A DNA stretch of 64,000 nt, taken from positions 14,880,001 to 14,944,000 of the forward strand of contig CM060733.1 of the NCBI GenBank assembly GCA_030704615.1, read 5' to 3'. Source of the stretch: Takakia lepidozioides. Taxonomy: Eukaryota; Plantae; Bryophyta. Below, piece by piece: positions 4,231 to 51,695 of the stretch (the first letter of the stretch is position 1; each line of letters begins with the position of its first letter). The notes beneath the pieces were generated by a model. The model worked only from the letters and a program-made list of their open reading frames with translations. It was not told the DNA's origin and made no database searches. The translations under genes were made by a program, and so were the position numbers.

Positions 4231-4451
4231 TCTTAGTTTCAAAAAACAGTAAAAGTTTATCCACGTGGTCAGTCTACCTGGGGGGTCATCTCGGTATCCA
4301 GGATAAATAATCAAGATTAAAGATAAAAATAAAAAATTAATTACACATATGAGACTTATATGATGACATTACCAAAACATGCCTATAGTAAGCTAGGGGA
4401 GACCTTCATAGTTATACGTTCTCAAAATATCAGTAGTAGTTTATTACAAAC

Positions 4452-5439: not shown

Positions 5440-8400
5440 AACTCCCCACACCAAAAACAACTCCACGTGTTGCTCCTGCAGGACACCCAGCCCAAACCCA
5501 GACTGACTATTGCTTCTTGTCTCCACCTACGGAAAGGTCTTGGCCTAATGAGAGGGTGGAAACTACGAGGAAGAGAAGCTAAAGCAATGCCTAACCCAGC
5601 ATGCTCTCATCCAACACTCTGGACTTCTCTCTATCCTCACTTGCATGACCATGGGAATATCATGAGATACTCCTCAAAACCGCCCTCCACGAGCTTCAAA
5701 ATTCGGCCTTCCAGACCACATGCCAGTCCTTAGGCAGTCCACCCGTGCCTGCACGCGTAAGCACAGGCCGTCCACAGGTCAACACGGGCCACCATAGACC
5801 AGCACAGGCCCACAACAGCTCACTGGTCACAGCCGTTCACAGTCCCACAGGCACTGGGCACAGCCTGTCGCAGCCCCTCCACAGCCTGTCACAGCCTCAA
5901 AGGCAAAGGCACGGCCTGTCACAGCACCTCACAGCCCTCACAGCCCCAAAGGCCCATGGGAACGCCTGTCACAGCCCCCACAGCCCGGTCACGCAAAGGC
6001 CTCAGGCACGGCCTGTCACAGCCCCCTCACAGCCCCACAGCCTCAAAGGCCTCAGGCCACGGCCTGTCCAGCCCTCACAGCCGTCACAGCCCCAAAGGCC
6101 ATGGGCACGGCCTGTCACAGCCCTCACAGCCGTCACAGCCCCAAAGGCCTCAGGCACGGCCTGTCACAGCCCCTCACAGCCAGTCACAGCCCTCACAGGG
6201 GCACGGGCACAGCCTGTCACAGCCAGCACAGCCCATCACAGCCTGTCACAGCTTGCCACAGCCCATCACAGCCAGTCACAGCCTCAAAGGCCTAGGGCAC
6301 GGCCTGTCACAGCCCCTCACACCCCTCACAGCCTCAAAGGCCTCAGGCACGGCCTGTCACAGCCCGTCACAGCCCGTCACAGCCCCAAAGGCCATGGGCA
6401 CGGCCTGTCACAGCCCGTCACAGCCCGTCACAGCCCCAAAGGCCCCAGGCACGGCCTGTCACAGCCCCTCACAGCCCGTCACAGCCCCAAAGGCCATGGG
6501 CACAGCCTGTCACAGCCTGACACAGCCGTCACAGCCCCAGGGCACAGGGCACAGCCTGTCACAGCCCATCACAGCCGTCACAGCTTGCCACAGCCTGTCA
6601 CAGCCCGTCAAAGCCCCACAGGCCAGGGGCACAGCCCGTCACAGCCCGTCACAGCTCGCCACAGCCTGACACAGCCCGTCACAGCCCCACAGGGCACAGG
6701 GCACAGCCATGTCACAGCCCCTCACAGCCCGTCACAGCCCCCAAGGCCTCAGGCACGGCCTGTCACAGCCCGTCACAGCCCCAAAGGCCACTGGGCACAG
6801 CCTGTCACAGCCTGACACAGCCCGTCACAGCCCCACAGGGCACAGGGCACAGCCTGTCACAGCCCATCACAGCCCATCACAGCCTGTCACAGCTTGCCAC
6901 AGCCTGTCACAGCCCGTCACAGCCCCCGAGGCCACTGGGCCACAGCCTGTCACAGCCCGTCACAGCCCCACAGGCCTCAGGGCACAGCCTGTCACAGCCC
7001 TGCACAGCCCGTCACAGCTCGCCACAGCCTGACACAGCCCGTCCACAGCCCACAGGGCACAGGGCACAGCCTGTCACAGCCCATCACAGCCCATCACAGC
7101 CTGTCACAGCCCGTCACAGCCCCAGAGGCCACTGGGCACAGCCTGTCACAGCCCGTCACAGCCCCAAAGGCCATGGGCACGGCCTGTCACAGCCCCTCAC
7201 AGCCCGTTCACAGCCCCAAAGGCCATGGGCACAGCCTGTCACAGCTCGCCACAGCCTGTCACAGCCCGTCACAGCCCCATAGGCCTCAGGGCACAGCCTG
7301 TCACAGCCCCGCACAGCCGCTCTGGCAGTTTAGCCATTTCTCCAAGGGGTTTAGCCACGCCAAGCTAGGGTTTGTGTCTCTTGGACTCTAGGCTTCTTTC
7401 CACCGAGCTATGGTGGCTGTGAGGAAATCAGCAAGGTATCCTTGCTCTTTCGGCTCCCACACACCACCATAGTAGCCCTAAGCCATGAGGTGGTTGCCAC
7501 AAACCAAGCCTTCTTTCTCACTTAGCCTCCCCAAACACGCCACTAAACTCAATGGCAAACAACCAAGCCCTGCTGGTTCCCAGCCCTTGTGAGCACTCAT
7601 TCAAGCACTCTCATTGGCCATAACATCTGTCTTAGAGCCCATTCCAGCCCTCTACACCTGTTGCTTCAAGAGTTGCGCTCCCTTCAAGCTTGAAGTTGAA
7701 ACCCCAACTCACATAGGCCCTACAAGTGCTTTTCTTTCACTCCAAGTGGAAACCAGCCCCTTCCTTCCTTCCTTGCACTCCCACACCTAAAAGTGCAAGC
7801 CTTCACCAGGCTGATAGCATGCTCCACACATACATTGCCCTCACATAAGGGAAGTCAGCCCTTCCCTCTTCCTTGCTTGCCCTCCAAGCTTGAAGATGGA
7901 AGCTTCAATGAGCTGAATACATGCTCCACACATGCAACCTCTTCACACAAGAGATATCAGCCCCCTATCTTGGCTCCTTGGCTCCTTGATGCTCTCTAAG
8001 ACAAGACTAAGCACTCCACAGCCTTTGCCAAGCTCCTGAAACCCTAAGGCTTACATTTCCAGCCACAAGACAATTCTCTTGTGGTGCAAGAGCTCTTCTT
8101 CCGAGCTCTGAAACCCTAGGTGCACATTCCATGGCCTTGCCGCACCTCTTAGCTCCTGTTCCAGCCCTGCTCTTGCCATGACAAGAGCCCTCTCAATGCT
8201 GAAGCTCGAGATTGAAACCCAATCTCACCATACTCCACAAAGTGCATTGATTTGCCCCAAGTCAAATCAGCCCTTTCGCTTGGTCTTGCAATCCTTCACA
8301 CAATGAAAGCTCGCATTCCCAAGTCCAGTTCTCAGCTTTGCCACCAAAGCCACTATAACCTGCTCTTGACTGGTCCTCTTCCCAATCGTGCTTGCTCATG

Positions 8401-10950
8401 CATGTACACAATCTGGAACCATCAAGGTGCTCTGGAATTACCTGCAGCATGGTGCTTTCATCTCTGAAGCTGAAGATCGAATGCCAAGGTCTACCACCTC
8501 GTAACCCACATCGCCTCCGCTTCTAACAACTAAGAGCTCCACGGTGCTCCTTGCATAACAACTTGGTTTCTCTCATTCTCAAGCAAAAACCACAAGTGCT
8601 ACAACTAACTCGTATCTGGCACTCACAGATACGAGCTAATCTTTCTCGAGTGATAAAGAAGGAGAATACAAGCACAAGCTCATGCGAGCTCACAAAGCTG
8701 AAGCATAAACTCATGCATATATAACCTCATCACTCAAATACAAGTCAAGCCAAGTGCACCCCACGCCATGGGGAATCCACACTATGGCACCATAGCTAGG
8801 CGCGGTGAGGCTCAACTCGAGAAAGATGAGCCTCCCGCGCTTGCCGTGAAGATAACCACTCCAGGGCCTAAATCTGCCTTGACCCCTGGATTGACACTTG
8901 GGCCAATCCCAAATGTCAATATGTAAAAGATAGCTATTTCCTAGCTAGTTTCACACTAGTGGTAAAATAACTTGACAAAGACAACAACTCCCCCACACCA
9001 AAAATACTCCATAGTGTCGCTCCTACAATGACACCCCAGCCCAAACCCATACTGACTCTTGCCTCCACCTACGGAAAGGTTTTGGCCTACAGAGAGGATG
9101 AAAGACTACAAAGAAGAGAGACTAAACCAACTCCTAATCCCAGCATGCTGTCATCCCACTACCCTATCTCCACACTATCTTGCTGGTCTCTCAAATAACT
9201 CTCCAGGAGCCCTCAAGATGTCTATCAAACAATCTCACTAAGGCTCCCAATCCTTGCACAATGGGACTCCAAAATAGTATACCAAGGCCCCAAGAGCCTG
9301 CCAAAACTTGGTCCTCGAGGACCCCAAATAGTCCTCCAAAGAACTCCAAATAGTCCTTACCCCAATGTGCAACCAAAAGTGGTCCAACTCAACTTGCAAG
9401 TCATTGTCCACCAAATCAATCCCCCTTCTAGTCCTTGGGATTTGATTGCAAACTACCATATCTCCATTGCCGAACAATCATGCATTTGTCTCCTCATCAC
9501 TTGACAATTGCTCCAAATCAACACAAATTATCTCAATGTGTAGGAGCAATGCTTGTCACTTACAATAATGATCCCAAACAATCCGCCTTGGATCCCACTC
9601 TCACGCCATATGCCTCATTTGGGGTCTTGCACCAATCCATCATCCATGTGCTCCCTTTGGTCATTTGAATGCATGTTCCATGACCTCTTAGCCTATGTGT
9701 TGCTCTCCTTCATCATAACATGAATCAACACCTCTCCACTTCACACACAAATGGATCTCAAGGCCTTCACCTCTTGCTAGTTCAAGAGCTTCCATTCTCA
9801 AACTTGAACTTACAAACTCAAGAAAGCATGCTCCATACATGAACCACTTGCTTGGTCAACTATCCACCACAAAGCTCGCACTACCAAGAGCATGAATAGC
9901 CAAGTATTGCCTCCCCCTCTTGTCACATTATATAGTTAGGGTGAAGCTATGCATACATTGAATGATGATTTCCCTTCAAGGATTTCCCACCATATGTTCT
10001 CCAAGCCCTTCCAATGGCGCCCTAAGCTTGGCTCCACACCACCATGATTGGAAGATTTCTTCACATGCTCCCTTTCAAAACATCTTGAGCTTCTTAGTGC
10101 TCTCCGAGTGCTTGCCTATGTTGTCTTCAAGCCCAAGCATATGTAGCTCCTTGACTTCTCTTCCACAACATCCACACTTTGAACTTGCTTAACTCTAGCT
10201 TGATAGTGAAATGAGCACTAATAAGCCTTTAGTCACTCTCCACAAGCCATGGCACACACCATTGACTCCATAATGCATACAAATGATTCTCAAACCCTAG
10301 AATCCATGCTTCCACACACACAAGACTTCATCCTTGCAATCTTTGCAAAATCTTGTGACTCAAGAGCTTTCTTCTCAAGCTCTCCAACTCCTTGGTGCAT
10401 GCAACACCCGAGTACCCTTCCTTGCAACCCCTTGCAACCCTTGTGATACAAGAGCTAAATTCTCCTAGCTTTCAACATCTTTAACGTACAAGTGCAAAAC
10501 TAATTCTTACACTTCGCACTCACAAGCATAAGGTGATCTTCTTGTAGTGATAAGAGATGAGAAATGAGGAAAGTGGAAAACAATGAAAGCTCTCAAGCAT
10601 GAAGCGATCACACTAAGAACAAGCCGTAATCATTCCAAGTGAAATCTACTCTATCACATAAACTAAGTCAAGCCAAGGGCACCTTTGCTTAAGGAATCCA
10701 CCCTACAAAAGCCCTCAACACACTCCCTCTCAATACCTAGAGCTATGGAGGTGGGAGATGCTCATGGAAGCTCAACTACAAGAAGATGAGCCCTCCTCAG
10801 CACTCACAAGGGGGAAACCCTTTTTTCATGTCCCAAGTGAGGCTTGACACCTCACTTGGCATATGAGACCAAATGAAATCCCAACACACAAAATACAAAT
10901 ATAAATATCCAAAATGTCCTAGTTAACTAGAAGTAAGTAATTCTAGTTAA
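5440..10950. repeat. Two diverged tandem units of an unclassified large repeat (~5440-8900 and ~8985-10900)
   Basis: Both units start ACTCCCCACACCAAAA...CCCAGCCCAAACCC...CTCCACCTACGGAAAGG (5441 vs ~8987). Both end AAGTCAAGCCAAG...GGAATCCAC...GCTCAACT...AAGATGAGCC (~8742-8833 vs ~10665-10792). Confidence 0.7.
5800..7320. repeat. Minisatellite of ~10-bp GTCACAGCC(C/T) units with higher-order ~40-50 bp periodicity (spacer like CCAAAGGCCATGGGCAC)
   Basis: Directly visible tandem array; strongly C/A-rich on +. Confidence 0.95.
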
Positions 10951-11547: not shown

Positions 11548-11762
11548 TAGTGCACTATGTCACCCAAATCACTCTAGGGTCAAATCCTACTACCATGACG
11601 GGTGTGATATGTTGTTCTCCTCCTTCCCTTGGGCGGTGTCCCATTCGGACGCCTTCATGGCGAGGTCATTGTGAAAGAGGTTATTCCTCTCACTATGAAG
11701 GGGCCTGATTTGTGAGCTGTCGCCCCAAATGTTCCCATAAAAAAAGAAAAAAAAAGAAAAAA
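11548..11762 (+). mobile_element. tRNA-derived SINE, copy 1 (A-box lost at the Helitron-like junction)
   Basis: Aligns with copies at 26418 and 51473: TAGTGCACT...GGGTCAAATCCT...GGGCGGTGTCCCAT...GTGAAAGAGGTTAT...TTTGTGAGCTGTCGC plus A-rich tail. Confidence 0.8.
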
Positions 11763-13378: not shown

Positions 13379-15519
13379 ATGCAGAACGGCAAAGAGCCTA
13401 TGCATGTGTACGCCCGCCCACCAGCTGGACATGTTTCCTCTCCTGTCACATCACCAGGTTGCTCTCCGCGGCTCCGCAATGGGCGAACGAAATCTGGGAG
13501 GATTGTGTTTGTGGGTGGAACTCCGTCCCCGCGCACAGTCTCGCAGAGGTTATCGATTTTAATTCTTTCGATATTTCTGAGGAGGCATGGAGTTCTCCTT
13601 CTTGTACCTCTTATTTATATTTCTGGCATGGTGCTCTACATGGGATCTTCATCAATGGATATGCCGAGATTATCAAAGCGCGCACCTGCGGGATCGCTTT
13701 ATCGCAGTCCCGAAGTGTTCAGGCAGTTGTGGCCGGATATGGAGCGGGCCAATGCTGCGATATACGGGGTGCTTATTGCTCCCCATTGTTTGTCCAATTT
13801 GTTCGAATAACGCTTAGTAGTTTTGGACACCTCACATTTCACGTACATCTCAGTGGAATATTTGATTGATGCAATCGGATTCATCTCATAAGCTTGGTGT
13901 TGGGCGATGGCATCCTACCCATGTTCACCTCACCTTTTGTCGTTGTATATTCACGTATAATTAACACACGTCAGAGATCCAACTGCTTAGATTGAATGAT
14001 TAAAATTGAATGCTGAGGAAACTTGGGGTAGAGCAAGAGGAAGTTTTTACCTTCGAAGTTAGTAAATTTCTGGCTCCTGTGTCTTCATATCATTTTTATG
14101 TCTGGCTTCATGTGCAGTCAGTCTGTCTCTTCCTCCTCTCTCAGTCAGTCAGTCAGTCTGGCAGGTGAGACGAGGGGAAATAGCCATCACACTATCAATC
14201 CAAAATCTGGATGGTAACCATGGCTAGAGGAGACAGGCGGACCCTCCCAGAGCCAGCAGGCCTACAAAGTCATACAAGCAGACCAAGTTGCTCATGCACA
14301 TGCCTTCAAAATTGCATAGGACTTTCATGTTTCTATTCTGTTATATGTAGTCATGTAGTAATCTCAGCGTGGGTGATGTGTGTAGGTTGGATTGGGGAGG
14401 TTGGAGCCAGACTGCTCGGGTCATGGACGGCAGGTATTGGAAACCTGGGAGTATCCAAAGGAGGGTGGTGCCTGGAAGCCCTGCCTTCAACATGATTCTG
14501 TAGAAGGTGGAAAATTCTTCTCTTGTGATGAGGTGTGCAAAGGCTTTGTCTGTAGTGGGGTGCCACCAAGAAATAGTTAGAGTGGGCAGGGTGGTATGGA
14601 TTTGTGGTTCACTGTGCTGTATTTGCCAGAGTATTCTGAATTAGTAACTCATGTCAAGAGAGCAAAGTATTACTCCACAAACAAATTTTCTGAGGATCAG
14701 AGGCTACTCCATTCAAATACCTGTGGTTTAATAAACAGTTCCTTCATTTCTAGATAATTAAAATTGGCATTGTTTTCCTGCTTCAGTCGGTATCTACACG
14801 AACAGGAACTCATGCTTATGAAGCACCGTGATGTATAGATACAGACTGTACTCATCGACCATTCCCTCACCAGAAGATGAAATGCCTCATGCAGGTAGCT
14901 GCCAGGCACTTCTGGGGGCCATACAGAAATGTATGCTTGCTGGCTTGTGCTTTAGACACACCAGTTGGTAATAACGGTTGCTATGGTCCCAGGTTTTTCC
15001 AATAATGGCTACATACTAATAGAGGCTAATGGTGGACTCAACCAGCAGCGCTCCACAGTACGTCCGCTTCTTTACTCATACAACATCCTGGCTCTTACAG
15101 GTTGTTGAATTTTCAAGTTACACTGTTGCATATCCCTTTCTCCTCCATTTTTCTCTCTTCTGAGCCTCCCGTAGACATTATAAAGTTATTTCTTTTTCTT
15201 TGTCCCATTGGACCTTTTCGCATTTTGTGGAGTTAATAAGTCTCTTTCTCTCAATCCGACTGACAATCCCTTGATCAATAGTTGTTTTTGGGCTGGTTGT
15301 TGAGGGCCCCTCTGTCTTTCTTGTTTCATCTTTCTCTTAAGCATAAGCTCTTTCATCTTTCCACGGACACTATAAAGTATCATTTCATTTCTCTCTCTGT
15401 CTCTGTCTCTCTATCTCTCTCTTTCTCCCTGACATATATATCTGTGCCTTTGTGTTCTGCTCAAACTGGGCGTGGGGACAATGGCCACAAGGCTACGGCA
15501 AATCAATGTCTTATGAGTA

Positions 15520-15563
<44 letters not shown>

Positions 15564-18500
15564 GTTCACTTGGAAGTCAATGGCTGTGCAGGTTTGCAAT
15601 GCTGTAGCAGTGGCGCGCTTGCTGAACACAACCCTTGTTATCCCTCGGTTTCATCTCAACAGTGTTTGGAAAGACCCTAGGTGGGCAAACTTCTTGATTC
15701 TTTCACCCCTATTTTGGCAAGTCGAGACAACCTAACTCCTAATAGAAGGAATAGGCCTGAAGTTTAAAGGAGCTGGTTTTAGTCACACTGGCTTGGTTGG
15801 CATTGTTCTTCCTCTTGCCATAAGTCAATAGATTATGAACTAGTAGTTGGTTGTTTGCAGCAAGTTCGGTGAGATCTATGATGAAGAGCATTTCATCAAC
15901 ACACTCGCCTCCCAGGTGAGGGTGGTGAGGCAGCTGCCTGAGGAGATAATGGCAGGGTATGATAACACCAGCATGATCTTCAAGTTTAAATCCGTGAAGG
16001 CTTGGGCTAGGCCTACTTACTATCTCAATACTGTCCTTCCCAAGCTGAAGCAGTTAGGGTATGTTGAAGCCTCTGTCTCTCTCTCCCTGTTTGCTTTTAA
16101 TATTTTCTTGGATAATATTAATAGGGATACATCTTATTGTTCTACTTTTTTCCCTTGGGTTTCTCCTTCTTTATGTTCAACACTGGGATTTCATCTGGTC
16201 GTTGAGTTCTGTTGGCCTCCTGTGCACGTATTCTTCTTGGCCCTCCTGTGAATTTGACAGATTTCCTCTTCTCTCTGAGCACCATGTAGAGGACCCTATG
16301 TGAGTCTCAACTTGACCAAGGGGTTTCACAGTGGAAGGATATAATTAATCTCTTTCTTAGCATGCTGTTTGTGAATGAGGGGATGTTGACTAATAAGTGG
16401 GCTGTGCTGCATGATTCGGCACTCAGAGTGATTAGATTCTCCCCGTTTGCAAATCGGTTATCATTTGATGGGATTCCGAAACACATTCAAAAGCTAAGGT
16501 GTTTCACCAATTTTGAGGCCCTGCGGTTTGCACCACCCATCGCATCACTTGGAGAGATCCTGGTGAAGCGAATGATTGCAAAGAGTGCCAACAGTAAAGG
16601 CAACTACATTTCGGTTCATCTCCGGTTTGAAGAGGTTGCAGTGCTATCCTCCATTGAGTCTTTGGGCTTGAAGTTTGCACTGTGGTGTTTGTATGAACAT
16701 CTGTTTATGTCACTTTCATTGCAACAGCTTGAGGGCAACACAATATGTTGAACCCAGCTCTGAGCAAATGTGGCCTTGCACCTAGGGGCTTCTGAGTATC
16801 TAAGTCGGAGTTTGGCAGAATAGGCCTTAGTTGCATTTAAAGTGGCCCATTAAAGAGTTCCCATTTACTGTATGAGAGGCTAGAAGTGATGTTGTCAATA
16901 GTAAGTGAAAAAGTGTTAAAAGTTTACCTGGCATTGTGGTAACGGTAAATCACCATCACATGGTGAAGGTCACTTTTGTCAGATTTTAAAAGAAGTCCCT
17001 TAAATATTGGCCATGGTAGCAGGATATGGTAGCATTTTCATGCTGTGTATACGAGGGTGGCAAGGAAGAGAAACTTGAATTGGATGGCGCGCGGGAGAGT
17101 GCATGGAGGGGCAAGTTCAGCAAAACTGGTCGTGTCATCGACCCTGGAGCTATTAGGATGAATGGGAAATGCCCGTTGACACCATTAGAGGTCTGTCTCT
17201 GTCCCTCTCTCTTATGTGTTTTCTGCAGCAATGGCCTCCCTTTCATAATTCTGCTCTCTTGTTGGTCCACACTGGGCACATTGATTGTGGATATTTTTGG
17301 AATGCTTTAAGGAAATATTGAGCTGTCGTCAAGCCAATGAAACACAAACTTCCTCGTATTCTTGAACAGGGCAGCTGGAGACCTCTTGTGCTTCGATTGT
17401 ACTGTGACTTCAAGAAATGACCCTAGCTTGAGTACCCCCAAGAGAGGCATCTGTACGCTCAGTGCAGAGTAGTGGGCTTCCATCATGTGAGGCCATTAAA
17501 GTGCCCATTGGTGTGAGTGAGGCAATGTGTGTGGCTGGCTCTGGCATCATTCTCCTTCAGTATATAAGACTCCATTACACATTTTGCCACAAATCATTGT
17601 TTTCTCCAATTTTGAGGCTTTAGACCTGTCTTCTGGTTAGGAAGCTTGATCTAAGTTTCTGAAACTAGATTTGAATCTATGGCAGGTGGGCATGGTGCTG
17701 CGAGGCATGGGATTTGGGAACACAACCCCAATCTACCTAGCCGCTGGGAAAATCTACAAAGAGAAGGAGAGCATGGCACCCCTATGGAAAATGTTTCCAC
17801 TTTTGCAGACAAAAGAAACGCTACTCTCCACTGAAGAGTTGCTGCCATTTAAGGTTTTGCGAACACTTTATCCCTTGGCCGATCTTTCTCTTGTTCATCG
17901 TAAAGAGAGAGAAAAGGAAACTTTACTCATAAGCGACGTTTGCTGTAGCCTTGAAGTCAATGAGCCTGTGCCCAGTTTGGGCAGATTGTTCCGCTAAACT
18001 GGGCTCAGGATCTTGCCCACAAGGCTACAGCAAACAACCTCTTATGAGTACATTCTCTCCACCTTGTTCTGCACAAACTGGCCACAAGACTATGACAAAT
18101 GTTTTATGAGTACCTTCTCTTTCTTCGTCATAATTTCTTTCTTTCTTTCTTTCATTATTGGTATCATTTCATTTCATTTGTTCTCTTTATTGACATCCAC
18201 ACCATAATGTGGAAGTTACAAGTTACCCAATTCTTTCTGATGTGATGTTAATGTGATCCCTAATCCAACTGTCTATCAACTATGGTACTCTATCACTAGT
18301 GGAAAGACAGCCTGGCTTTCAGATCATAGTGGGTGACAACCCCATGACGTACTTCGGAAGGGTGAAAACCAAGAGGGCTATAGTTCATTGTAGCCAACAT
18401 GTACAGGAGATGCTCAACAAATACATCAACACATCTTCCTTTTAGATAACTAGGCTAGATATTGAAACACAAAGTTTGTGGGCCCTGGTGGCAGGATTAT

Positions 18501-26417: not shown

Positions 26418-26644
26418 CAGCTCAGTTGGAAAGTGCACTTAGTGCCACCCAGGTGGTTCGGGGGTCAAATCTTGCTACCTTGATGGCTGTGGTGTATTGT
26501 ATATTCTGGGCGGTGTCCCATGCGTAAGCCTTCACGGCGAGGTTACTGTGAAAGAGGTTATTTTTCCTCTCACTATAAACTAAGGGGCCTGATTTGTGAG
26601 CTGTCGCTCCCAGGTGTTTCCGTGTAAGAAAAAGAAAAAAAAAG
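26418..26644 (+). mobile_element. tRNA-derived SINE, copy 2
   Basis: A-box-like CAGCTCAGTTGG, B-box-like GGTCAAATC, shared body with copies 1 and 3, A-rich tail. Confidence 0.82.
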
Positions 26645-33692: not shown

Positions 33693-36600
33693 TCACCAAA
33701 ACCAGTCGTTCCGTGCATCAACAGCCTTCACTTGGCTAGCTACAAGGGGCATATACCCGAATAGAGAAACGAAGTGGTTCACACACCACGTCCGATGCTT
33801 CCTGTGCCCATTGAGACTACTGATACCCGTCGACCCAATCTCAAAAAGTCTCCCTGCACCACATCCACAGGCAAAATAACCAAGTAGCTTCAGATGCTTT
33901 CAGTGAGGACTTGAACCTGCATTTACATTCATAAGGTATCTTTCCATATACTGCTGGAAGTGCAACCCACAGAAAATACAGAGCAAGCTGGCCTTTCTAC
34001 ACCATCTCTGGTTGGATTGAGAAACGACTCTTGCAGGGGTGCTCCTCCAATCCAAGGGAAACCGCAAAAGTAGGCCTAATTTTCAACTACATGTCAACTA
34101 CACCCTACTGGACTAATTAGTCTATGCTTTTGCCTCCAAATGTTTGCTGAGCTGTAGGGGGGTGAGGAGCTTCAAATCCATGATTGAACTTCTTTCTAGT
34201 GCAAATTTTGGAGGTTTAAAATAGCTTCTCTTTACCCTACATATACAGATATTTGGTCAGCCAGGTTTAACTCGCATGCTTCAGGGTCTGATGTGGACTC
34301 TACAGAAACACAAGTCACTAGAAAAGCGGCCAAGAAAGCTAAGAGTTTCAGCAAGTCAGATTGCAGGACTGTATCTTGATTTCTTTTGATGCCGTAACCA
34401 AATGTAAAAATAGACGAGTAAAACCTATACCCTTCGGCATGTTGAGGAAGAGAGGTCCAGACAGATGGGTCAAAACAGCAATTCTACACTAGAGCCTCTT
34501 TCTCTTCCTTTTTCCACTCTCTGCAGTCTATCTTTGGGTGCATCCATGGATGTGAAACTGCAGGCAGGCTAGTCTACTGAATACTTTCTCTCTCTCAGCA
34601 GCATGCATAACATTAAAGAGGCTAACCTTTGACCCAAATGGGAGGAGCACCGGTTGCATTTGCAATCAGGAAAGACATTGCAATATCCTCGCAGTTCCTG
34701 CACTCTCCACCAAAATCTCAATTATGTCATTGTTGAGTTGATATACAATTCAATGTTGATCCTATTCAGACGTCAAAATTTGAATCATCACATAGCTGTT
34801 CTCTCTGGACAAATCGGGAAAGACAAACGATGACTTGGAAGTTAGTCAATTGGAAGTGTACCAAAAGCACCCACATCACAGCCTGGAAAATTGAACGGGT
34901 TGAGCTTGAGTATCAGGGAACGACCTTGTATCTTTCACATAGGTTCGGATAGATGCCGGCATCTGCTTAGTATAGAGCTCAAAGTACTTGTGGTGGATGA
35001 AGGCAGCCTTGGAGAGCACCATGCTGTAGGTGCCCATCCACCATACTGACCACCACCCCCCATATGTGTACTCCGGTGGCTCTCCTGGACGCTTCTGCTT
35101 TGTTCCAGACCACCTCAAACAATTCATCAGTGCATGCAACAGTTCAGACCTGATGAAACAGAGTGGGCTCACTTGACAAAATTCAGGGATAAGCAGCCCT
35201 AACATAAAACAAGAAGGTGGGCAAGGCATCATCAACCATGAAGCTTGTGCAAGACCAGGATTACATGAGAGTTTCTGACAGACATTTGCTGGCAACTGGT
35301 TGGAAAGATCCCAGATTTTGTGTTCAAAGTTTGATAATTGAGTGCTTTTCAAGCATTCCAAAGCATGTACATAAGCACATAGCAGACCCTCCAGTTACAG
35401 GGGTTTTATGTGGTTATTTATGTGCTGGCCTCAAAAGCCAGCAACATAATCCCTGTATCACTACTCGAGACTGCTCACTGAAAGCAGGTGTAACATATCT
35501 GCCTATCACATCATTAAAGAAAAAGGGCAGAGAGGAACAGAAATATGCCTATTAACCCTAGACCTACCTGCTTGGAACAGAAAGGCCATCACACATGCTA
35601 CAGCAAAGAGAGAGCATGGAGGGGGATTGTAACGGCAGAATACACACCGCAGAATTCAGCCAGTGCATTCGCGGGACAAAGCCAACCATGCTGTTTGGAG
35701 CACTGAGCCATACACTGAAGGCAGATTCCACTGAAGTACAAGGAACCACCACATCATCATCAATCGAAAAAATCGCCTCAGTGCGAAGGCCCTCAATGGG
35801 TTTAAATCGGTTGTTCAAATTGTCTTCCTGGTTTGTGTTGAACCGGAAGTCTAGTCTTTGGGACATCTCCCGTGAGCTGGCAGCCACTGACTGAATCAGA
35901 GAGAACTGCAAGGCTTCAGAGGGGGGTTCATGCTCACTCCACACTACCTGGATTGCATCCACATTCCTGCATGCTGCATAGTGGCCTACTGTCTGCTTGA
36001 GCAAATCGTACCGTTTCCAAGTGTTGATAAGCACTGTATATCGATGCCTGGCCCACAGCAGACAAATAATCAGAACTATGGATGGCAACTCTCTCTCTCT
36101 CTCTCTAGCAACTAGGCTACGGCAAACAATGTCTTATGAGTACGATCTCTCTAGCAACTAGGAATCAGCACTTCAATAGCTTGCCAATTTCTGAGCGAAA
36201 ATAATCACTCTCCGTACTCCAAGTCACTTCAATTACAAAACAGCATAGGGTGTAACAGACTAATTACACGTTCCTATATGTAGCAGATATTCCCTAGAGA
36301 TCTGCTGTACCCTTTACACCCTTTGATTTGCTATGCCAACATAAAGCAGAGCTTTGGGAAAGGCTCCTGCAGACCAAGCAAGAGTGGAGTTTACCCAAGG
36401 AAGAGGATTAGAAGCCCTGGTCTAATTCAGTAACCTGTTTCCCCAGCAATTTTGAGGCTAACATGCGGAGTGCCATTGTTCCAAAAATAAATTCCATTTT
36501 GTGACCAGAGTCTAAAACCCCTCCACTGGTTAAACCCTGCCAGAAATCTGCAAGAGCAGATTCCCCCAGCTTCATCATTGAAAAACAAGTGAGTGATTTC

Positions 36601-37513
36601 AGTGTTCTCAAAGTAGATTGTCTGAAGAACAGCCAACATCCCCTGTCTCTCTCACTAGGGGGTGTGCCTGGTTTGACCAAGCTACTAAAAATGTCCGGTC
36701 GGTGGACATGATAGCAAGGAAGGCCAGCATTTCAGTACTAGGCACTCTTGTCAAGAGACTAGTTTTGAAACCATCAAAAAGACATCATTGCACCTCTTTG
36801 CGCCAATTTCAGGTTCATGAAGGCAAATGGCAAAAGCTGTGGCCCTCTTTGGGCCTGAATTCCCTGTGAGAATAAGTCTATCTTCGAGTGTCTTCTTGAG
36901 AAAATCTGGATAAGCTCAAGTCCCAGCATCGCTCCAATCCTGACCCCGGGAGAATGAGCACAAGGCTGCGGCACCCAGAGTCTAATGATTACCTCTCTCT
37001 GACTTACAGATTTCACAGAAAATTTGAACAAGGTCAGGAAATCCATGAGTAGGGCATCAGCACAGGAAGCAATGCCAAAGTTTCATCCATGTTCTCGTAA
37101 TGTTTACACGCATTATGAAAGGAGCGGGTTCCTGAGAATCCCATCAACAGAAGCTTGACCATTTCCAGTGGTAGTCAACATGCCAGGCTTGATACCTGAA
37201 CAAAAACCTAAGTCTTGACTCAAATTCCACGAGGTTGATCCTAGTATGAGATGCCCAACTGTGGGAAAGGCGTCCATGGTTAATGGATAAGCATCATTGC
37301 AGTTGAATCTGAGTAGTAAGAATTTAATTACCTTCCAAGCGATCGCGGAGTTTGATGATGGTGACGCCATCCGAAAATAGAATCCGCGCGGCTCGTCAAC
37401 AAAAACGCCCCGAAGACGAGGCATAAACCCACTAAAAGCTTAATTCTATAAGACCCATTGTTACTGAGGAGGATTCGCAAGCGAAGCAACGATCTGTCTC
37501 GCTGTCCCTTCAT
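33693..37513 (-). CDS. Glycosyltransferase family 64 protein (EPC1/EXTL2-like), 5 exons
   Basis: Exons ~37513-37332, 36047-35648, 35095-34925, 34697-34627, 33853-33693. Motifs: YTVLINTWKRYDLL, DNLNNRFKP, IFSIDDD (DxD), VGFVPRMHW, YSMVLSKAAF, RNCEDIAMSFL, ends NDWFW*. An alternative in-frame start exists at ~37578. Confidence 0.92.
36100..36162 (+). mobile_element. Very short LINE 3'-end insertion with ~17-bp target-site duplication
   Basis: TCTCTCTAGCAACTAGG (36100-36116) [CTACGGCAAACAATGTCTTATGAGTACGA] TCTCTCTAGCAACTAGG (36146-36162). Confidence 0.75.
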
Positions 37514-38828: not shown

Positions 38829-39092
38829 TGTTCTAAGATGTTCCACATATCCATGGGAGACAAGACTTTGGTCTATAAAAGCCGGCGTAACCAAGAGCCA
38901 CTCGAGAGATGGGGGTACTATGCAAATATCAAGCCACAAACCTCAGTATAACTGGATCTCATGAGGTCGAAAGACCACCCCACGCCATAGGGAATCCACA
39001 CTACGGCGCCATAGCTAGGCGCGGTGAGGCTCAACTCGAGAAAGATGAGCCTCCCGCGCTTGCCGTGAAGATAACCACTCCAAGGCCTGACA
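38829..39092. mobile_element. Solo-LTR-like dispersed repeat sharing ~115 bp with 8757-8870
   Basis: CACCCCACGCCAT.GGGAATCCACACTA.GGC.CCATAGCTAGGCGCGGTGAGGCTCAACTCGAGAAAGATGAGCCTCCCGCGCTTGCCGTGAAGATAACCACTCCA is near-identical at both sites. Candidate TG...CA ends and a TATAAAA, but no clean TSD. Confidence 0.5.
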
Positions 39093-41572
39093 TTGCAAGG
39101 ATGTGAGCCCAGGACGCATATTGATGTCGACCTACATATACCCCATGCAAGTATAACGGGGGAGAAGGGTTTGAGCCGACGACGCATTTGGAGGTAGACC
39201 CACATGTAACTTACTCCATGCAGCTGGGGATCTCAGGGGGATTTCTATTCTATTCTTTTCTTTTTCAAGCAAAACAAGTGACAACTAAGTTAACTCTTGT
39301 TCCGACCGGTTTACACTCTGTTCCGGAGTGATGTGATTGATTCAGCGTTGATTGATCCGGATATTTGATTCTCCTGCATTGTGGCTGAGGGTCAGGAAAT
39401 TTGCAATTTTTGATTACCGGAAGTTGCCAACTTATATCCAGAACAATATAATAAATAAAATAAAATAAATAAAATCTCAAAATTGGGGATCATGAGGGGA
39501 GCGGAGTATATGATGCCCAGCCCAGGCTGACCGGATGTGACCGGCGACTGCTGGTGGGGTGGCGGCAGCAGTAGGGCCGGTCATTAGCTTTTCGTTGCGA
39601 ACGGGACAGCAGGCGCCCCCTCATTGCCTTGCCGGCGTATCGCTACCGGAACCGGAAACTGCACACAATGGCGGGCCATGCTGGATGTTAAACTACCATT
39701 TACTCCAAACCTTGTGCGCGGAAGGATGAGAAACTGCAAGCTTCTGAGAACTCGCGTAGTGTCTGCAAAGTCCACTGCGCATGTGCGCTCCTGTTACTCA
39801 ACGCAAATGGACAGCGATTTGGACGGATCTGCATCATACGCCAGACATTCATCCATCAACGCGAGCAGGACCAAAGGAACGGGATTTGCGGGTGGGGGAC
39901 GGTGGCGTATGGGGCAGGCCGCAGCGTGTCTTGTCCAACTCTCTACTCTTTCCATTATATATACATCTTATTATATATATACATGGGTCACACTAGACGT
40001 AACGAACTTTCAGATTTTTTCCCCACTCGGCTACCGCTGGTGGTGGGGCTCATTTCGGTAATCCGCTAAACTCGGAGGCTTACCCTACACATCCTATATC
40101 TATGTAACCATATATATATAGGTCAGGGGTGATATCCCCACTGTAAGCCTTCACGGCCCCAAGGTGGTTATTTTTTTACTTCTTCTAAATTTTTTTCCAG
40201 GGCCTCTGTCCCCTGTTCTAAAATATAGATATAAGAGCCTGGGTGGGGAAGTTTCCCCCTGCAAGTAAACTTCCGCATCCTCGCAGTAGTTTGTTTTTCA
40301 CCTTTTTCGTTCATTTTCAGGGTTCCCCTTTTTACAGACCACTCAGAAAAAGCCTCTTCCCCTCTCTTTATATTATATATATAAAAGAGGGAGGAGAAGA
40401 GAGAGAGAGAGAGAGAGGATGAATATAATGATCATTGATTGTGGCCTGCTATCAAAACTGTATCCAGGTTTGGCTGTGTATAGTAGTTTTGATGCAAGAG
40501 TTATGTTGCCAGAGTGTACAATCCAGTTTACCGTAAAAAATCTCGGCAATTCGTGTAGGGGTGATGGCCTAATTAAGCCAGCGACAGCTGGTACGCTACC
40601 ACCATTCATCCGTCTTCTTCCATCGTTCAATATTTGGTGTGACCCAGGCTGCATAAGAGAAGCTACAGGGAGGACAAATATGGGGTACATACAAACCTTT
40701 GAGATACTCAACCATACAACAACATTGGTACTACCAAGGTGATGCATTGCATGGTAGTTTGTTACAGGAACTGAACAACCTAAAAGGCAACTCGAACATA
40801 GAAATGGTATTTACTTTGCACTAGTGGTCGTACCTGGCTGGCTCGAAAGAGCTAGAGACCAGAGTCCACTAAAGAAAGTTGAGCTAGAGTTTGCAAGAGA
40901 AAGAGAGATCTGGTGGGTCAACAATTAGCCACTGCTGCTTCCGTGACGGACGCCTACAAGAGACCACGCCTCCCAGAAGAGTACAAGAAGATGGTTGGTC
41001 CTCCCTCAAGAGATGACCTGACCCCAATACAACTATTAGTGCCTACACCGAAGAGACCTCTTATCTAGCCTTATTGGCCACTTTGATGTGTACACCCCAA
41101 TATCAATGACCACTATGATCTTTTGAATCAAATGAAGCACTGCTTCTACAGTTTTCACAAGCTACTCAAAAGACTCTGGCTTGATGACCACGAGTCAAAA
41201 CTTTCCAAACCCCTTCACATCATCCAACCCCGCAGTGGCTTATGGGGCCTTCCTTGCTACTACTTTGCTGCACCCTTGATTCTCCAACGAATGCAACTCA
41301 AGGACCAACAATACATATGACTGACTCTGAGCACCGAACCTTCTTCACCAGAGGAACACCGGAGCTTCCTCAGCCATACCTCCAACCCTCCCAAAAGGAG
41401 GAAAAACAGAAAGAAAAGAAACCGCCTCTCTTTGCAAAGCTTTTGGCCTGTAGGAAATAATCCTGTTGTAGTTTCAGAAGATTGAACCAATGCGTTGCCT
41501 ACCATGCACCCCAGTCCTGCCTGACTCTCTTGGATACAACCAAACTTTCCAAGGTTCATTGGCGAAATAGCC

Positions 41573-44158
41573 CTATACAACTTGGTAACTCTTGACCACC
41601 AATTCTGTTCGTTTTGCGAATTTGACAGGACTTCCCGCTTGTGGCCCTTGTGCCTGTGTTACGCTTGCCACCTGAAATCACACATGAATCCCAAACACAT
41701 GACCCTTGGTGTTTCTATTCACAACCATACAGGTGGAACAGTGCTGAGCCAAAAATGACAAATGGTAGTGCGCCACGTGTTACACATCATGCCATGGAAC
41801 ACAGAGGAGAGGAGCATAAACAAATAAAAAAGAGTGAGGGAAACTACGCCCCCACCTCTAATGTAGAACACACAAATCAGGGCTTCATCAAAAAAGTGCT
41901 GCAAGGAGTCACAAACAACGGTTGAACAGAATATACCTTCACATCACAGAAGGTTTTTGTTGCACTGAACTTCACATCGATTGGGAAAAATGCACCCGGA
42001 TCTGCCGCGGGCACAACAAACTCCATGGATCCACTGAAGAAGGCAAAACCCAAGAAACAAGATTTAGAGAGAATGTAGTACAAAAACGTCCTGGGGAAGA
42101 CCTGATTTTGTCGAGCATCGCAATGAAGAACAGCTACAGATCTGACTCTTGAAAAAACACAGGTGAAAATTTTGAATAGAACACGCCACTTACTTGAGGT
42201 TACTGTTGTCAATCAACACATTGGACCACTCCAAGATTGACCTCCGAGAGTCATACCTGCAACCGCAATCATGCCCCGCAGTTGCATCAATCATTCTGAT
42301 GTACAGAAGTGATGAATCAAGAGAACTGTTTACTATCCACCTACAGGAAGGCAATTACGTCAAGATCTACGGGGACTCACCTCCACTCTCCATCTACTTG
42401 GTTCACTGTCGGGGGATCACGAAGGGCCGGCAACGGGATTTGAATCACAACGTTTTGAAGCTCAAATGTCCTAGACGCTTCATACTCGATGTTGATGTAT
42501 GATTCTCCACCTGACACTGAGGGCCAGCAGTTGACTGGATTCCAACCCGCATCACAGATCTCCCCAGATGAGTTAAAGAAACAACAACCCCCAAGAATGA
42601 TACAACGGATTGGCCTGTCCATGGGAATGCATTTCAGCATCCCACTCATACCAATTGAGGATTCTCGAGACAGTTTCAGACTTCCAGAAGCCACAGGCAT
42701 GGGGATACTGTAAGGCACACCATCCCTGGCAACAACCTTCAAGTAACTGTATTGCATAACCCAAAGCCAACATCACCGAGAACTAAATCTGCTATGGATT
42801 GCCTTGGTCATCAACCTATATTTTGCAGTAGAGAACACTGCAAAACATCCAACCCTGGAGCCAAAGGGAAGATCTGAGTAGCTACAGGGTATAAAAATGA
42901 GCATCTGAGTGGGAGATCCTTCTTGCTAATATCTTCTCATCAAGCCAAATTTCTCAAGAGGCCAACGTGGCTGAAGTAAAAGGGCTACCACTCTAAAAGG
43001 CAGAGGCAAACTTAGGCTCAACAGTGATGTCAGAGAAAAGGCAGGTGCCATCAAGAAAATTGACTTCTCAGACATGCACAAAAACCTTCCCATGCGTCTT
43101 CCTACTACTCAAACATATGCATACTTACTGTTGAGGGGCACCAGAGATTCTTGCTTGCTTTGCATGCGCCACTTCAAAACACCCAGAGCAGTGCCTGTGG
43201 GAAATGGTTTACTGGGATCCTTGAGGCCCAGAATGTTGTTATTAGAGTACAGTTTTTTATCCATATTCGGGTGTGACGTAAAGTGGAAACCTTTGTTGGC
43301 ACCAGACTCCACCTGCAGAGAGGAGCAGCAGAATCAGAACAGCTCCAGGGATGGCGAAAATCCAGAATTCTTGCCACTGACAGACCTCAGGTACAACATT
43401 TGTCCATATCGAAGATCCAAAACTATACAACCAAAGAGAGTGGAGAAAGAAAAAGAAACATGTTACATCCACAGGAGCCGAAGGACCCAAGCCACACCAG
43501 TGGAGAGAGAGAATGTACTCATAGGACGTTGTTTGCCAGAGCCTTGTGGCATTGACCCCGTGCCCAGTTTGAGCAGAACACAAAGGGACAGAACCTACCT
43601 TGGTCAGGGGCTGACGCCGGTAGTAAGACCTACTCTGGAATAAACAATTGAACCGGGTTTTCCAGATATCCTATAGAGATCCCTTTACACAAGCATCAAC
43701 CTGCTGTGTGTGGTTCAAAGTTGGTAAACAACGGTACAGGCACAATTCCCTTGATAGATTTGGAGAGAGCGTCTCTCTGGTGAGCGAACCCCAGACAATG
43801 AATCAGAAAATGAATATTGTCTTCAGGTTGCCCACACAACCGGCGATTGCACTCTCCCTCTCCTCTCGGCTTCTGTCTGCTGTTCAAAGGTAGGCTTCCC
43901 GCCCTGAGTTTAAATTTCAGTCTAGTGCCGAGAGTGAGTAGACCCTTGAGGTCATCCATGATGTCCTCCCCCATGTCACAGACTGGAAACACGTTCAAGG
44001 AAGTTTTCTGCCTAACTTCATCACTCGAGAGAATGTACTCATAAGACGTTGTTTGCCGTAGCCTTGTGGCCATTGACCCCGCGCCCAGTTTGAGCGGACC
44101 CATTACTTGAGAGAGATTGTACTCATAAGACGTTGTTTGCCCTCCATTACTTGAGAGA

Positions 44159-44194
<36 letters not shown>

Positions 44195-51472: not shown

Positions 51473-51695
51473 TTTTTTTTTCTTAATAAAGGGAAACACA
51501 TGGGAGCGACAGCTCACAAATCATAGTGAGAGGAGAAAATAACCTCGTTCACAGTAACCGTGCCATGGAAGCTGAGAAATGGGACACCGCCCAGGGAAAG
51601 GGGAGAAGAGTATATCGCACCTGGCAAGTAGCAGGATTTGACCCCAGAATCATCTGGGTGGCACTCAGTGCACTATCCAACTGAGCTACAGTGGT
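51473..51695 (-). mobile_element. tRNA-derived SINE, copy 3 (most complete head)
   Basis: Minus strand reads ACCACTGTAGCTCAGTTGGATAGTGCACT...GGGGTCAAATCCTGCTAC, then the shared body and an A tail. Confidence 0.82.

What the first reader, a model, noticed from the sequence alone, without database searches (positions are those of the whole stretch)
43503..44192. A (CT)n-tailed LINE family that inserts at CT microsatellites and stacks on its own tails in introns
Seen: one 3'-terminal motif (TGCTCAAACTGGGC.GGGGTCAATGGCCACAAGGCTACGGCAAACAACGTCTTATGAGTACA-TTCTCTC) occurs 8 times. The copies are at 15441+, 17905-, 17988+, 18065+, 36116+, 43503-, 44028- and 44110-, all intronic (OFUT, GT64, delta-COP). 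They share the 3' end and differ at the 5' end (~30 to ~520 bp). The longest copy carries a LINE-type CCHC C-terminus. Here three 3' ends are stacked head-to-tail. Known: variable 5' truncation plus TSDs is the signature of target-primed reverse transcription, and microsatellite-specific non-LTR elements are known in animals (e.g. Waldo, Dong). Inference: this is a CT-repeat-targeting retroelement whose tail creates the next landing site, generating and expanding intronic microsatellites.
Basis: partly seen in the sequence, partly recalled or inferred. Interest (0 to 1): 0.8.

Follow-up and report, generated by a model that had tools for sequence, protein, structure and literature searches.

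The report
TC-run-seeking LINE tails in plant introns
Nine front-truncated copies of one jumping gene (a LINE) sit in the introns of a bryophyte-like plant; they landed at TC repeats and piled up there, a behaviour known from fish and insect LINEs that this scan has already seen many times in this genome.

Summary
All eight listed copies exist, and there is a ninth at 36935-36997. They share one 3' end and differ in 5' end, from 25 to 514 nt.

Four copies have target-site duplications of 13-17 bp that begin with TCTCTC. Three of five independent loci lie within 20 nt downstream of a TC run; 0.5% of window positions do.

The anatomy needs correcting. The shared "3'-terminal motif" is the coding end of the LINE's ORF. 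The stop codon is the TGA in TTATGAGTACA, and only six bases separate it from the TC run.

- **Tail or target:** in three of the four duplicated copies the TC run is fully explained as duplicated target, so a (CT)n tail is not shown.
- **Order in the stack:** by CpG decay, the 514-nt copy F is older than G and H, which lie on its microsatellite side. I infer that new copies reuse the TC run kept upstream, not old tails.
- **Link to a reverse transcriptase:** it rests on homology only. The C-terminal zinc-knuckle domain matches endonuclease-plus-RT ORFs from other organisms.
- **Clade:** unresolved. The layout resembles RTE.

Earlier agents of this scan reported the same behaviour on other DNA of this genome. 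I rate it a new member of a known kind, of modest interest.

The parts
15427..15522 (+). Copy A, 96 nt: the last codons of the ORF, the stop and a 6-nt UTR. A 13-nt duplication (TCTCTCTCTTTCT) lies at 15414-15426 and 15551-15563, and a 41-nt TC run at 15523-15563 follows the element.
   Evidence: blastn, nhmmer, flank comparison, sequence
17917..17985 (-). Copy B, 69 nt, about 25% diverged, all CpGs lost. It is followed on its own strand by TC-rich sequence down to about 17900 and sits head to head with C.
17987..18053 (+). Copy C, 67 nt, about 16% diverged, followed by TCTCTC at 18054-18059. No duplication was found.
18060..18114 (+). Copy D, about 55 nt with an internal deletion, about 34% diverged. 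It is the oldest of the B/C/D group and lies 3' of the younger C.
36116..36145 (+). Copy E, 30 nt, with a perfect 16-17 bp duplication (TCTCTCTAGCAACTAG) at 36100-36115 and 36146-36161. An 18-nt TC run at 36089-36106 runs into the left duplicate.
36935..36992 (+). It has no TC run on its 5' side.
43513..44026 (-). Copy F, 514 nt: about the last 170 codons of the ORF with the decayed zinc-knuckle domain. It carries a deletion or frameshift near 43715, an in-frame stop near 43671 and a 1-nt deletion near 43550. TC run at 43503-43512.
44033..44098 (-). Copy G, 66 nt, all CpGs kept. A 16-bp duplication with two transitions lies at 44099-44114 and 44017-44032; the right copy runs into F's 5' end.
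44117..44141 (-). Copy H, 25 nt, with a perfect 17-bp duplication (TCTCTCTCAAGTAATGG) at 44144-44160 and 44100-44116, plus 2 filler bases at the 5' junction.
44153..44193 (-). (CT)20 microsatellite on the 5' side of the F/G/H stack, about 40 nt inside the delta-COP intron. I take it to be the reused landing site.

Best explanation
These are dead, front-truncated copies of one endonuclease-type LINE in a bryophyte-like land plant.

**Anatomy.** The element's RNA ends six bases after the ORF's stop codon (TGA-GTACAT), with no poly(A).

**Insertion, shown.** The target-site duplications of 13-17 bp always begin with TCTCTC, directly after the six-base end.

**Insertion, inferred.**
- The endonuclease nicks the bottom strand at or in a TC/GA run.
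- The freed GA-rich 3' end primes reverse transcription. It probably pairs with a few U/C bases at the very end of the RNA; these could be a short tail or read-through of the source copy's own target.
- Reverse transcription usually aborts after 25-100 nt.
- The second nick falls about 16-17 bp downstream.

**Stacking.** Because the duplication starts in the TC run, the run survives on the 5' side and can be hit again. This gives head-to-tail piles. Here the decayed long copy F lies farthest from the run, and G and H sit between it and the run.

**Cis-signal, weakly supported.** The last 55 nt or so of coding sequence probably also serve as the RNA signal the reverse transcriptase recognises: a small hairpin followed by AUGAGUACAU.

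**Introns, inferred.** Introns are hit often, and mostly in the sense direction, probably because their pyrimidine tracts offer TC runs.
For: **Copies and ends**
- Nine copies share one 3' end; their 5' ends range from 25 to 514 nt.
- Duplications abut the six-base end exactly: E 16-17 bp perfect, H 17 bp perfect, G 16 bp with two transitions, A 13 bp perfect.
- All nine copies are followed by a TC run.

**TC-run association**
- Three of five independent loci start within 20 nt downstream of a TC run of at least 8 nt. Only 0.49% of oriented window positions do, so the binomial chance is about 1e-6.
- Three of the four TC runs of 16 nt or more in the window touch a copy.

**Coding 3' end**
- G reads through to ...[13 protein letters not shown]-stop.
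- F continues the ORF in another frame and matches relatives there.
- Relatives P0010 and P0005 end with the same GVNG/GVHG motif a few residues before their stops.

**Link to RT**
- The 109-aa peptide matches C-terminal domains of P0013 (endonuclease, RVT_1), P0016 (RT end), P0022 (Exo_endo_phos, RVT_1) and the L007 ORFs (RVT_1 730 aa followed by P0005).

**RNA signal**
- GCGGGGTC...ATGAGTACAT is kept at DNA level in L007, although the proteins are about 33% identical.
- The consensus hairpin has one compensatory pair, C-G / U-G / U-A.

**Chronology**
- CpG retention is G 5/5, H 1/1 and F 2/5. Divergence in the other group is D 34% against C 16%.
- In both stacks the younger copy lies on the 5' side of the older one.
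Against: - No RT-bearing copy of this family is in the window, so the link to an RT is by homology of a 109-aa decayed peptide. E-values run from 1e-13 to 7e-4 in the exhaustive search, and from 2e-18 to 8e-6 by tblastn against the window.
- B, C and the ninth copy have no TC run or duplication on their 5' side. B and C sit head to head, which the model does not explain.
- The sample is nine copies at five loci in one window.
- Single-sequence folds of the 3' end are no better than shuffles (z -0.1 to -1.5). The hairpin rests on five sequences, two of them from this family.
- Eight of nine copies are under 100 nt and several 5' ends cluster. That could instead mean a short non-autonomous derivative.
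- Tail versus target is unresolved: copy A has 41 nt of TC on its 3' side against 13 nt on its 5' side.
Confidence: 0.8

Rival explanations
1. The RNA carries a true (UC)n tail. New copies land in the tails of older copies, and the family itself creates and lengthens the intronic TC microsatellites.
For: - Every copy is followed by TC.
- Copy A has 28 nt of TC beyond its duplication.
- Three of the four long TC runs in the window touch a copy.
- Relatives are followed by other simple repeats, TA-rich or CA-rich, which could be lineage-specific tails.
Against: - In E, G and H the TC on the 3' side is 6-8 nt and no longer than the TC on the 5' side, so the duplication explains it.
- The (CT)20 run lies on the 5' side of the stack and next to an exon, with no copy upstream of it.
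- In both stacks the younger copy lies on the 5' side of the older one, not downstream of the older copy's 3' end.
Confidence: 0.3
2. The short units of about 55-96 nt are a separate, non-autonomous mini-element (SINE-like or a tail-only parasite) that borrows the LINE's 3' signal. On this reading they are not random truncations of the LINE.
For: Five of nine copies start within about 30 nt of each other in element coordinates. Eight of nine are under 100 nt.
Against: - The short copies have no promoter-like head (no tRNA, 5S or 7SL part).
- Their 5' ends are not identical: element lengths are 25, 30, 55, 58, 66, 67, 69 and 96 nt.
- They are collinear with the coding end of the long copy F.
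Confidence: 0.1
3. The motif belongs to one of the nuclease-less Penelope-like elements of this genome. Earlier scan notes say these are guided by pyrimidine microsatellites.
For: Earlier notes report such elements anchored in GA/TC repeats in the same genome. I did not test those notes.
Against: - The ORF end is homologous to C-terminal domains of ORFs with an AP-type endonuclease and RVT_1.
- Clear 16-17 bp duplications indicate staggered endonuclease nicks.
- There are no pseudo-LTRs.
Confidence: 0.03

Closest known systems
Kibi (TC-microsatellite-specific LINEs of fish: KibiDr1/2, KibiFr1, KibiTn1; Kojima and Fujiwara 2004, as summarised in PMC3812793)
   Same: Both are endonuclease-type non-LTR elements found at TC repeats.
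   Different: - Kibi is described as sequence-specific for TC microsatellites. Here the association is strong but not exclusive (three of five loci).
- From my own knowledge, Kibi belongs to the Tx1 group of the L1 clade. The clade of this element is unresolved, and its compact, UTR-less layout looks more like RTE.
- The host here is a land plant.
RTE-clade LINEs of Lepidoptera that seed microsatellite families (PMC2887409)
   Same: - A single ORF with endonuclease and RT.
- An extremely short 3' UTR next to simple repeats.
- Most genomic copies are 3' fragments: the C-terminal coding end plus the UTR beside a microsatellite. That is exactly what is seen here.
   Different: - The SSR units there are part of the 3' UTR and are explained by slippage. 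Here most of the TC is duplicated target.
- This family has a C-terminal zinc-knuckle domain.
- I could not test the RT phylogeny. Earlier scan notes call TC-seeking LINEs of this genome RTE-X.
Stringent-type LINEs with a 3' hairpin and a short repeat (UnaL2 with TGTAA repeats, I element with TAA; reviewed in PMC3747384), and CR1 (own knowledge)
   Same: A conserved 3'-terminal RNA signal with a small stem-loop, no poly(A), and priming helped by pairing with simple sequence at the nick.
   Different: - Here the signal lies inside the coding sequence and the UTR is only 6 nt.
- The hairpin is supported by a single compensatory pair.
Dong, Waldo and Mino (microsatellite-targeting LINEs of insects and snails, PMC3812793)
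   Same: They insert into microsatellites (TAA, ACAY, AC).
   Different: They use other repeat motifs, belong to other clades (R4 and R1, from my own knowledge), and have animal hosts.

Membership tests
Non-LTR retrotransposon (AP-endonuclease-type LINE) | ORF with an AP-type endonuclease and a reverse transcriptase | tested here: inconclusive
   No RT or endonuclease of this family lies in the window (tblastn). The 109-aa ORF end is homologous to the C-terminal domain of ORFs that carry both: P0013, P0022 and L007/P0005, plus P0016 with the RT end.
Non-LTR retrotransposon (AP-endonuclease-type LINE) | Common 3' end with variable 5' truncation | tested here: met
   Nine copies of 25-514 nt all end at the same six bases after the stop codon.
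Non-LTR retrotransposon (AP-endonuclease-type LINE) | Target-site duplications flanking individual copies | tested here: met
   E 16-17 bp and H 17 bp are perfect, A 13 bp is perfect, and G is 16 bp with two transitions.
Kibi (TC-repeat-specific, Tx1 group) | Insertion specific to (TC)n microsatellites | tested here: not met
   Three of five loci are at TC runs, against 0.5% expected. B, C and the ninth copy lack a TC run on the 5' side, so this is a preference and not strict specificity. The sample is small.
Kibi (TC-repeat-specific, Tx1 group) | RT groups with Tx1/L1-clade elements | not testable with these tools
   No clade-labelled reference set (Repbase/RTclass1) was on hand. The PDB holds only L1 and R2 RTs; the relative P0013 scores 2e-20 against L1 and 4e-14 against R2, which does not decide the question.
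RTE / RTE-X | Extremely short 3' UTR, no poly(A), simple sequence at the 3' end | tested here: met
   The stop TGA is followed by 6 nt and then the TC run in all well-preserved copies.
RTE / RTE-X | Compact element with one long endonuclease-RT ORF | tested here: inconclusive
   This is seen only in a distant relative: L009 is a 4.1-kb scaffold with one 1222-aa ORF and 51 nt after its stop. It was not seen for this family.
RTE / RTE-X | RT groups with RTE/RTE-X in a phylogeny | not testable with these tools
   No labelled references were available. The RTE-X label comes from earlier scan notes, which I did not test.
Stringent-type LINE 3' signal | Conserved 3' stem-loop with covariation | tested here: inconclusive
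   The consensus hairpin has 8 pairs, with one compensatory and one one-sided change across five sequences. Single-sequence folds are not better than shuffles.

The most novel reading that the evidence does not exclude
This would be an old, compact LINE lineage shared by a bryophyte and unrelated eukaryotes, including marine plankton, that has fused its RT-recognition RNA signal into the last 55 nt or so of its own coding sequence.

In the plant it would use intron pyrimidine tracts as landing sites. Its 16-17 bp duplication would rebuild the tract next to the splice site, as at copy A. That would be a 'splice-safe' way of colonising genes, and it would explain the intronic, sense-biased distribution.
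Probability: 0.2. Interest if true: 0.55.

Novelty: new member of a known kind. Interest (0 to 1): 0.35.

Why it matters
Microsatellite-seeking LINEs have been described mainly in animals. In the papers I could search I found no land-plant example.

A very abundant family that favours TC runs would help explain three things in this plant:
- where intronic TC microsatellites and short repeats come from;
- why LINE debris sits in introns in the sense direction;
- how repeat annotation should treat 25-100 nt fragments that look like coding ends.

It is not a new mechanism, and other agents of this scan have already reported the same behaviour at many other loci of this genome.

Tried and rejected
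**Searches that found nothing**
- Pfam on the 109-aa ORF end: no family.
- Word-based protein search with the peptide: nothing.
- Earlier-findings look-up by sequence: blank.

**Searches that did not help**
- Contigs of the closest relatives (P0001, P0014, P0015, P0007) hold only truncated or decayed tails with no RT upstream.
- ESM Atlas on P0016 and on a GT64 exon gave neither a clade nor host taxonomy.
- Literature searches on RTEX gave no description of its 3' ends or of plant members.

**Ideas I dropped**
- A strong RNA fold of the 70-nt motif: z-scores are only -0.1 to -1.5.
- The motif as a 3' UTR: rejected once the reading frame and the relatives' C-termini were compared.

No contig looked human.

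Full report

Yes. Searching the window for parts of the motif with up to three mismatches finds the listed sites and none in shuffled sequence. The repeat finder links the same places.

A blastn with the long copy and an nhmmer profile built from the copies give nine hits with E-values from 2e-24 to 9e-6. These are the eight listed copies plus one diverged copy at 36935-36997.

In element orientation the copies are:
- A 15427-15522 (+)
- B 17917-17985 (-)
- C 17987-18053 (+)
- D 18060-18114 (+)
- E 36116-36145 (+)
- the ninth copy 36935-36992 (+)
- F 43513-44026 (-)
- G 44033-44098 (-)
- H 44117-44141 (-)

A TC run at 40398-40417 (-) is preceded by sequence that may be a tenth, very decayed copy. 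The profile does not detect it.

Pfam confirms the host genes: O-FucT, GT64, a delta-COP-like adaptor mu-homology protein and a TPX2 protein. The nearest named homologues of the TPX2 ORF are liverworts at 40-44% identity, then Sphagnum and a lycophyte. The host is therefore a bryophyte-grade land plant without a close relative in the database.

Reading the sequence places the copies as follows:
- B, C and D lie in an O-FucT intron.
- F, G and H lie in a delta-COP intron.
- A lies 15-30 nt upstream of an O-FucT exon acceptor.
- For E and the ninth copy I could not show an intron.

**2. What the shared motif is**

The long copy F encodes a zinc-knuckle region. An exhaustive profile-free search of 1.84 billion proteins found 13 relatives. 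Among them or their cluster mates:
- P0013 has an endonuclease-like N-terminus, RVT_1 and this C-terminal domain.
- P0016 has the end of the RT followed by the same domain. It is collinear with P0013 at E 1e-21.
- P0005 sits directly after a 730-aa RVT_1 ORF on contig L007.
- A full-length 1222-aa endonuclease-RT ORF from a marine scaffold (P0022, L009) also matches the peptide.

So the family is tied to an RT-encoding LINE by homology. It is not tied by a full-length copy of its own.

Relatives also matched F downstream of its apparent stop, in another frame. Followed through, the ORF continues to the very end of the element. In the well-preserved copy G the frame reads ...[13 protein letters not shown] and stops at the TGA inside TTATGAGTACA. 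Relatives P0010 and P0005 end with the same GVNG/GVHG motif a few residues before their stops.

The 3' UTR is six bases: GTACAT, GTACAA or GTACGA.

F itself is broken in three places: a deletion or frameshift near 43715, an in-frame stop near 43671 and a 1-nt deletion near 43550.

At the DNA level, the stretch from GCGGGGTC through ATGAGTACAT is kept in L007 even though the proteins are only about 33% identical. A consensus fold of five 3' ends gives a small hairpin with one compensatory pair, C-G, U-G and U-A. This suggests the coding end doubles as the RNA signal for the reverse transcriptase.

That support is thin. Single-sequence folds are no better than shuffles.

**3. How the copies were inserted**

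I compared the flanks of each copy.
- E has a perfect 16-17 bp duplication.
- H has a perfect 17 bp duplication.
- G has a 16 bp duplication with two transitions.
- A has a perfect 13 bp duplication that abuts its true 5' end.

Every duplication starts with TCTCTC, directly after the six-base UTR. In E and H the 5' junction shows 1-3 nt of microhomology or filler.

This is the signature of target-primed reverse transcription with staggered nicks about 16-17 bp apart, the first nick lying in a TC run.

| Measure | Result |
|---|---|
| Independent loci starting within 20 nt downstream of a TC run of at least 8 nt | 3 of 5 |
| Oriented window positions that do so | 0.49% |
| Binomial chance of 3 of 5 | about 1e-6 |
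| TC runs of 16 nt or more that touch a copy | 3 of 4 |

B, C and the ninth copy have no TC run on their 5' side, so this is a preference rather than a strict rule.

**4. Tail or target?**

In E, G and H the TC after the element is 6-8 nt and no longer than the TC on the 5' side. The duplication alone accounts for it. Only A has more TC on its 3' side (41 nt) than on its 5' side (13 nt).

A true (CT)n tail is thus not demonstrated. The RNA may simply end at GUACAU. It may instead carry a few U/C bases read through from the source copy's own target, which would make tail and target equivalent.

Relatives keep the terminal ATGAGNACA(T) but are followed by TA-rich, T-rich or CA-rich simple sequence. 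The same question is open for them.

**5. The stack**

| Copy | CpG sites kept | Divergence from consensus |
|---|---|---|
| G | 5 of 5 | 4% |
| H | 1 of 1 | not meaningful (32 nt compared) |
| F | 2 of 5 | 9% |
| C | 1 of 5 | 16% |
| D | 0 of 4 | 34% |

In both stacks the younger copy lies on the 5' side of the older one. G's duplication includes the first 10 bases of F, and H's duplication overlaps G's left duplicate.

The simplest history is F first, then G, then H. The order of G and H rests on the duplications, not on decay. Each new copy used the TC run retained on the 5' side, here the (CT)20 run at 44153-44193, which has only unique intron sequence and an exon upstream of it.

Geometrically the 3' TC plus duplicate is also a possible site. 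Even so, this stack does not show copies landing in old tails.

**6. What remains unexplained**

- Eight of nine copies are under 100 nt, and several 5' ends cluster.
- B and C lie head to head, 1 nt apart.
- In E, G and H the first nick lies only 6-8 nt from the 3' edge of much longer runs.

**7. Comparison with what is known**

- TC-microsatellite-specific LINEs (Kibi) are known in fish, and other microsatellite-targeting LINEs (Dong, Waldo, Mino) in insects and snails (PMC3812793).
- Lepidopteran RTE elements have one endonuclease-RT ORF and an extremely short, SSR-bearing 3' UTR. They are mostly found as 3' fragments, the coding end plus the UTR, next to microsatellites (PMC2887409). That is very close to what is seen here.
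- Microsatellite bias is also reported for Penelope-like elements of the green lineage (PMC8557442). The endonuclease-RT relatives and the clear duplications argue against that class here.
- I could not place the RT in a clade. No labelled references were available, and the PDB comparison is uninformative.

**8. Earlier notes of this scan**

Earlier notes describe, at many other loci of the same genome, TC-seeking LINEs. They include:
- a "tail-less LINE with a 6-nt 3' UTR" called RTE-X-like;
- polarised, chronologically ordered stacks at TC runs.

My own analysis of this window reproduces the six-base UTR, the TC-led duplications and the polarity. I did not test the RTE-X label.

**9. Verdict**

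This is a real and well-behaved LINE family and a tidy land-plant example of a known behaviour. The scan has already seen the phenomenon repeatedly in this genome. I found no paper describing it in a land plant, within a limited literature search.

Noticed in passing
window 26419-26640 (+), 11558-11685 (+), 51473-51687 (-), 40127-40157: A SINE-like family of about 230 nt with a tRNA-like head (box A/B-like GCTCAGTTGG ... GGTTCGGGGGTCAAATC) and an A-rich tail. ARAGORN calls no tRNA. Its tail differs from that of the LINE studied here.
   Followed up: partly
window 5833-7348: A long GC-rich minisatellite built from 10-nt (CACAGCCCGT-like) and about 51-nt units. It creates long spurious ORFs.
   Followed up: no
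window 15523-15590: Copy A's TC run and right-hand duplication form the pyrimidine tract directly upstream of an O-FucT exon acceptor (AG at about 15577 or 15590). The insertion hit the 3' splice-site region and appears to have rebuilt the tract.
   Followed up: partly
window 8752-8869 and 38971-39088: A 118-nt repeat in two copies, 95% identical and 30 kb apart. Its nature is unknown.
   Followed up: no
window 3623-4240: A cluster of repeats of about 100 nt (CAATATTGGCGGTCG...), including an inverted pair at 3738-3784 and 4115-4161.
   Followed up: no
L006 594-680: In a relative from an ENA metagenome, the terminal GGACAT unit occurs twice, 14 nt apart, inside a TA repeat. This may be a mini-stack or slippage product analogous to the plant stacks.
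   Followed up: no
L001 4788-6030, L002, L003, L004, L005: The closest protein relatives of the ORF end (P0001, P0002, P0007) lie in contigs from several samples. Each has the same small downstream gene (75-88 aa) and no RT upstream. This looks like an old fragment kept in a conserved neighbourhood, or a shared 3' region of another family.
   Followed up: partly
window 36089-36106: On the GT64 sense strand, the (GA)9 complement of E's TC run directly abuts the ORF that begins with the protein's hydrophobic anchor (LPSIVLIICLLW). An in-frame TAG lies in E's duplication, so E sits at or very near an exon boundary.
   Followed up: partly
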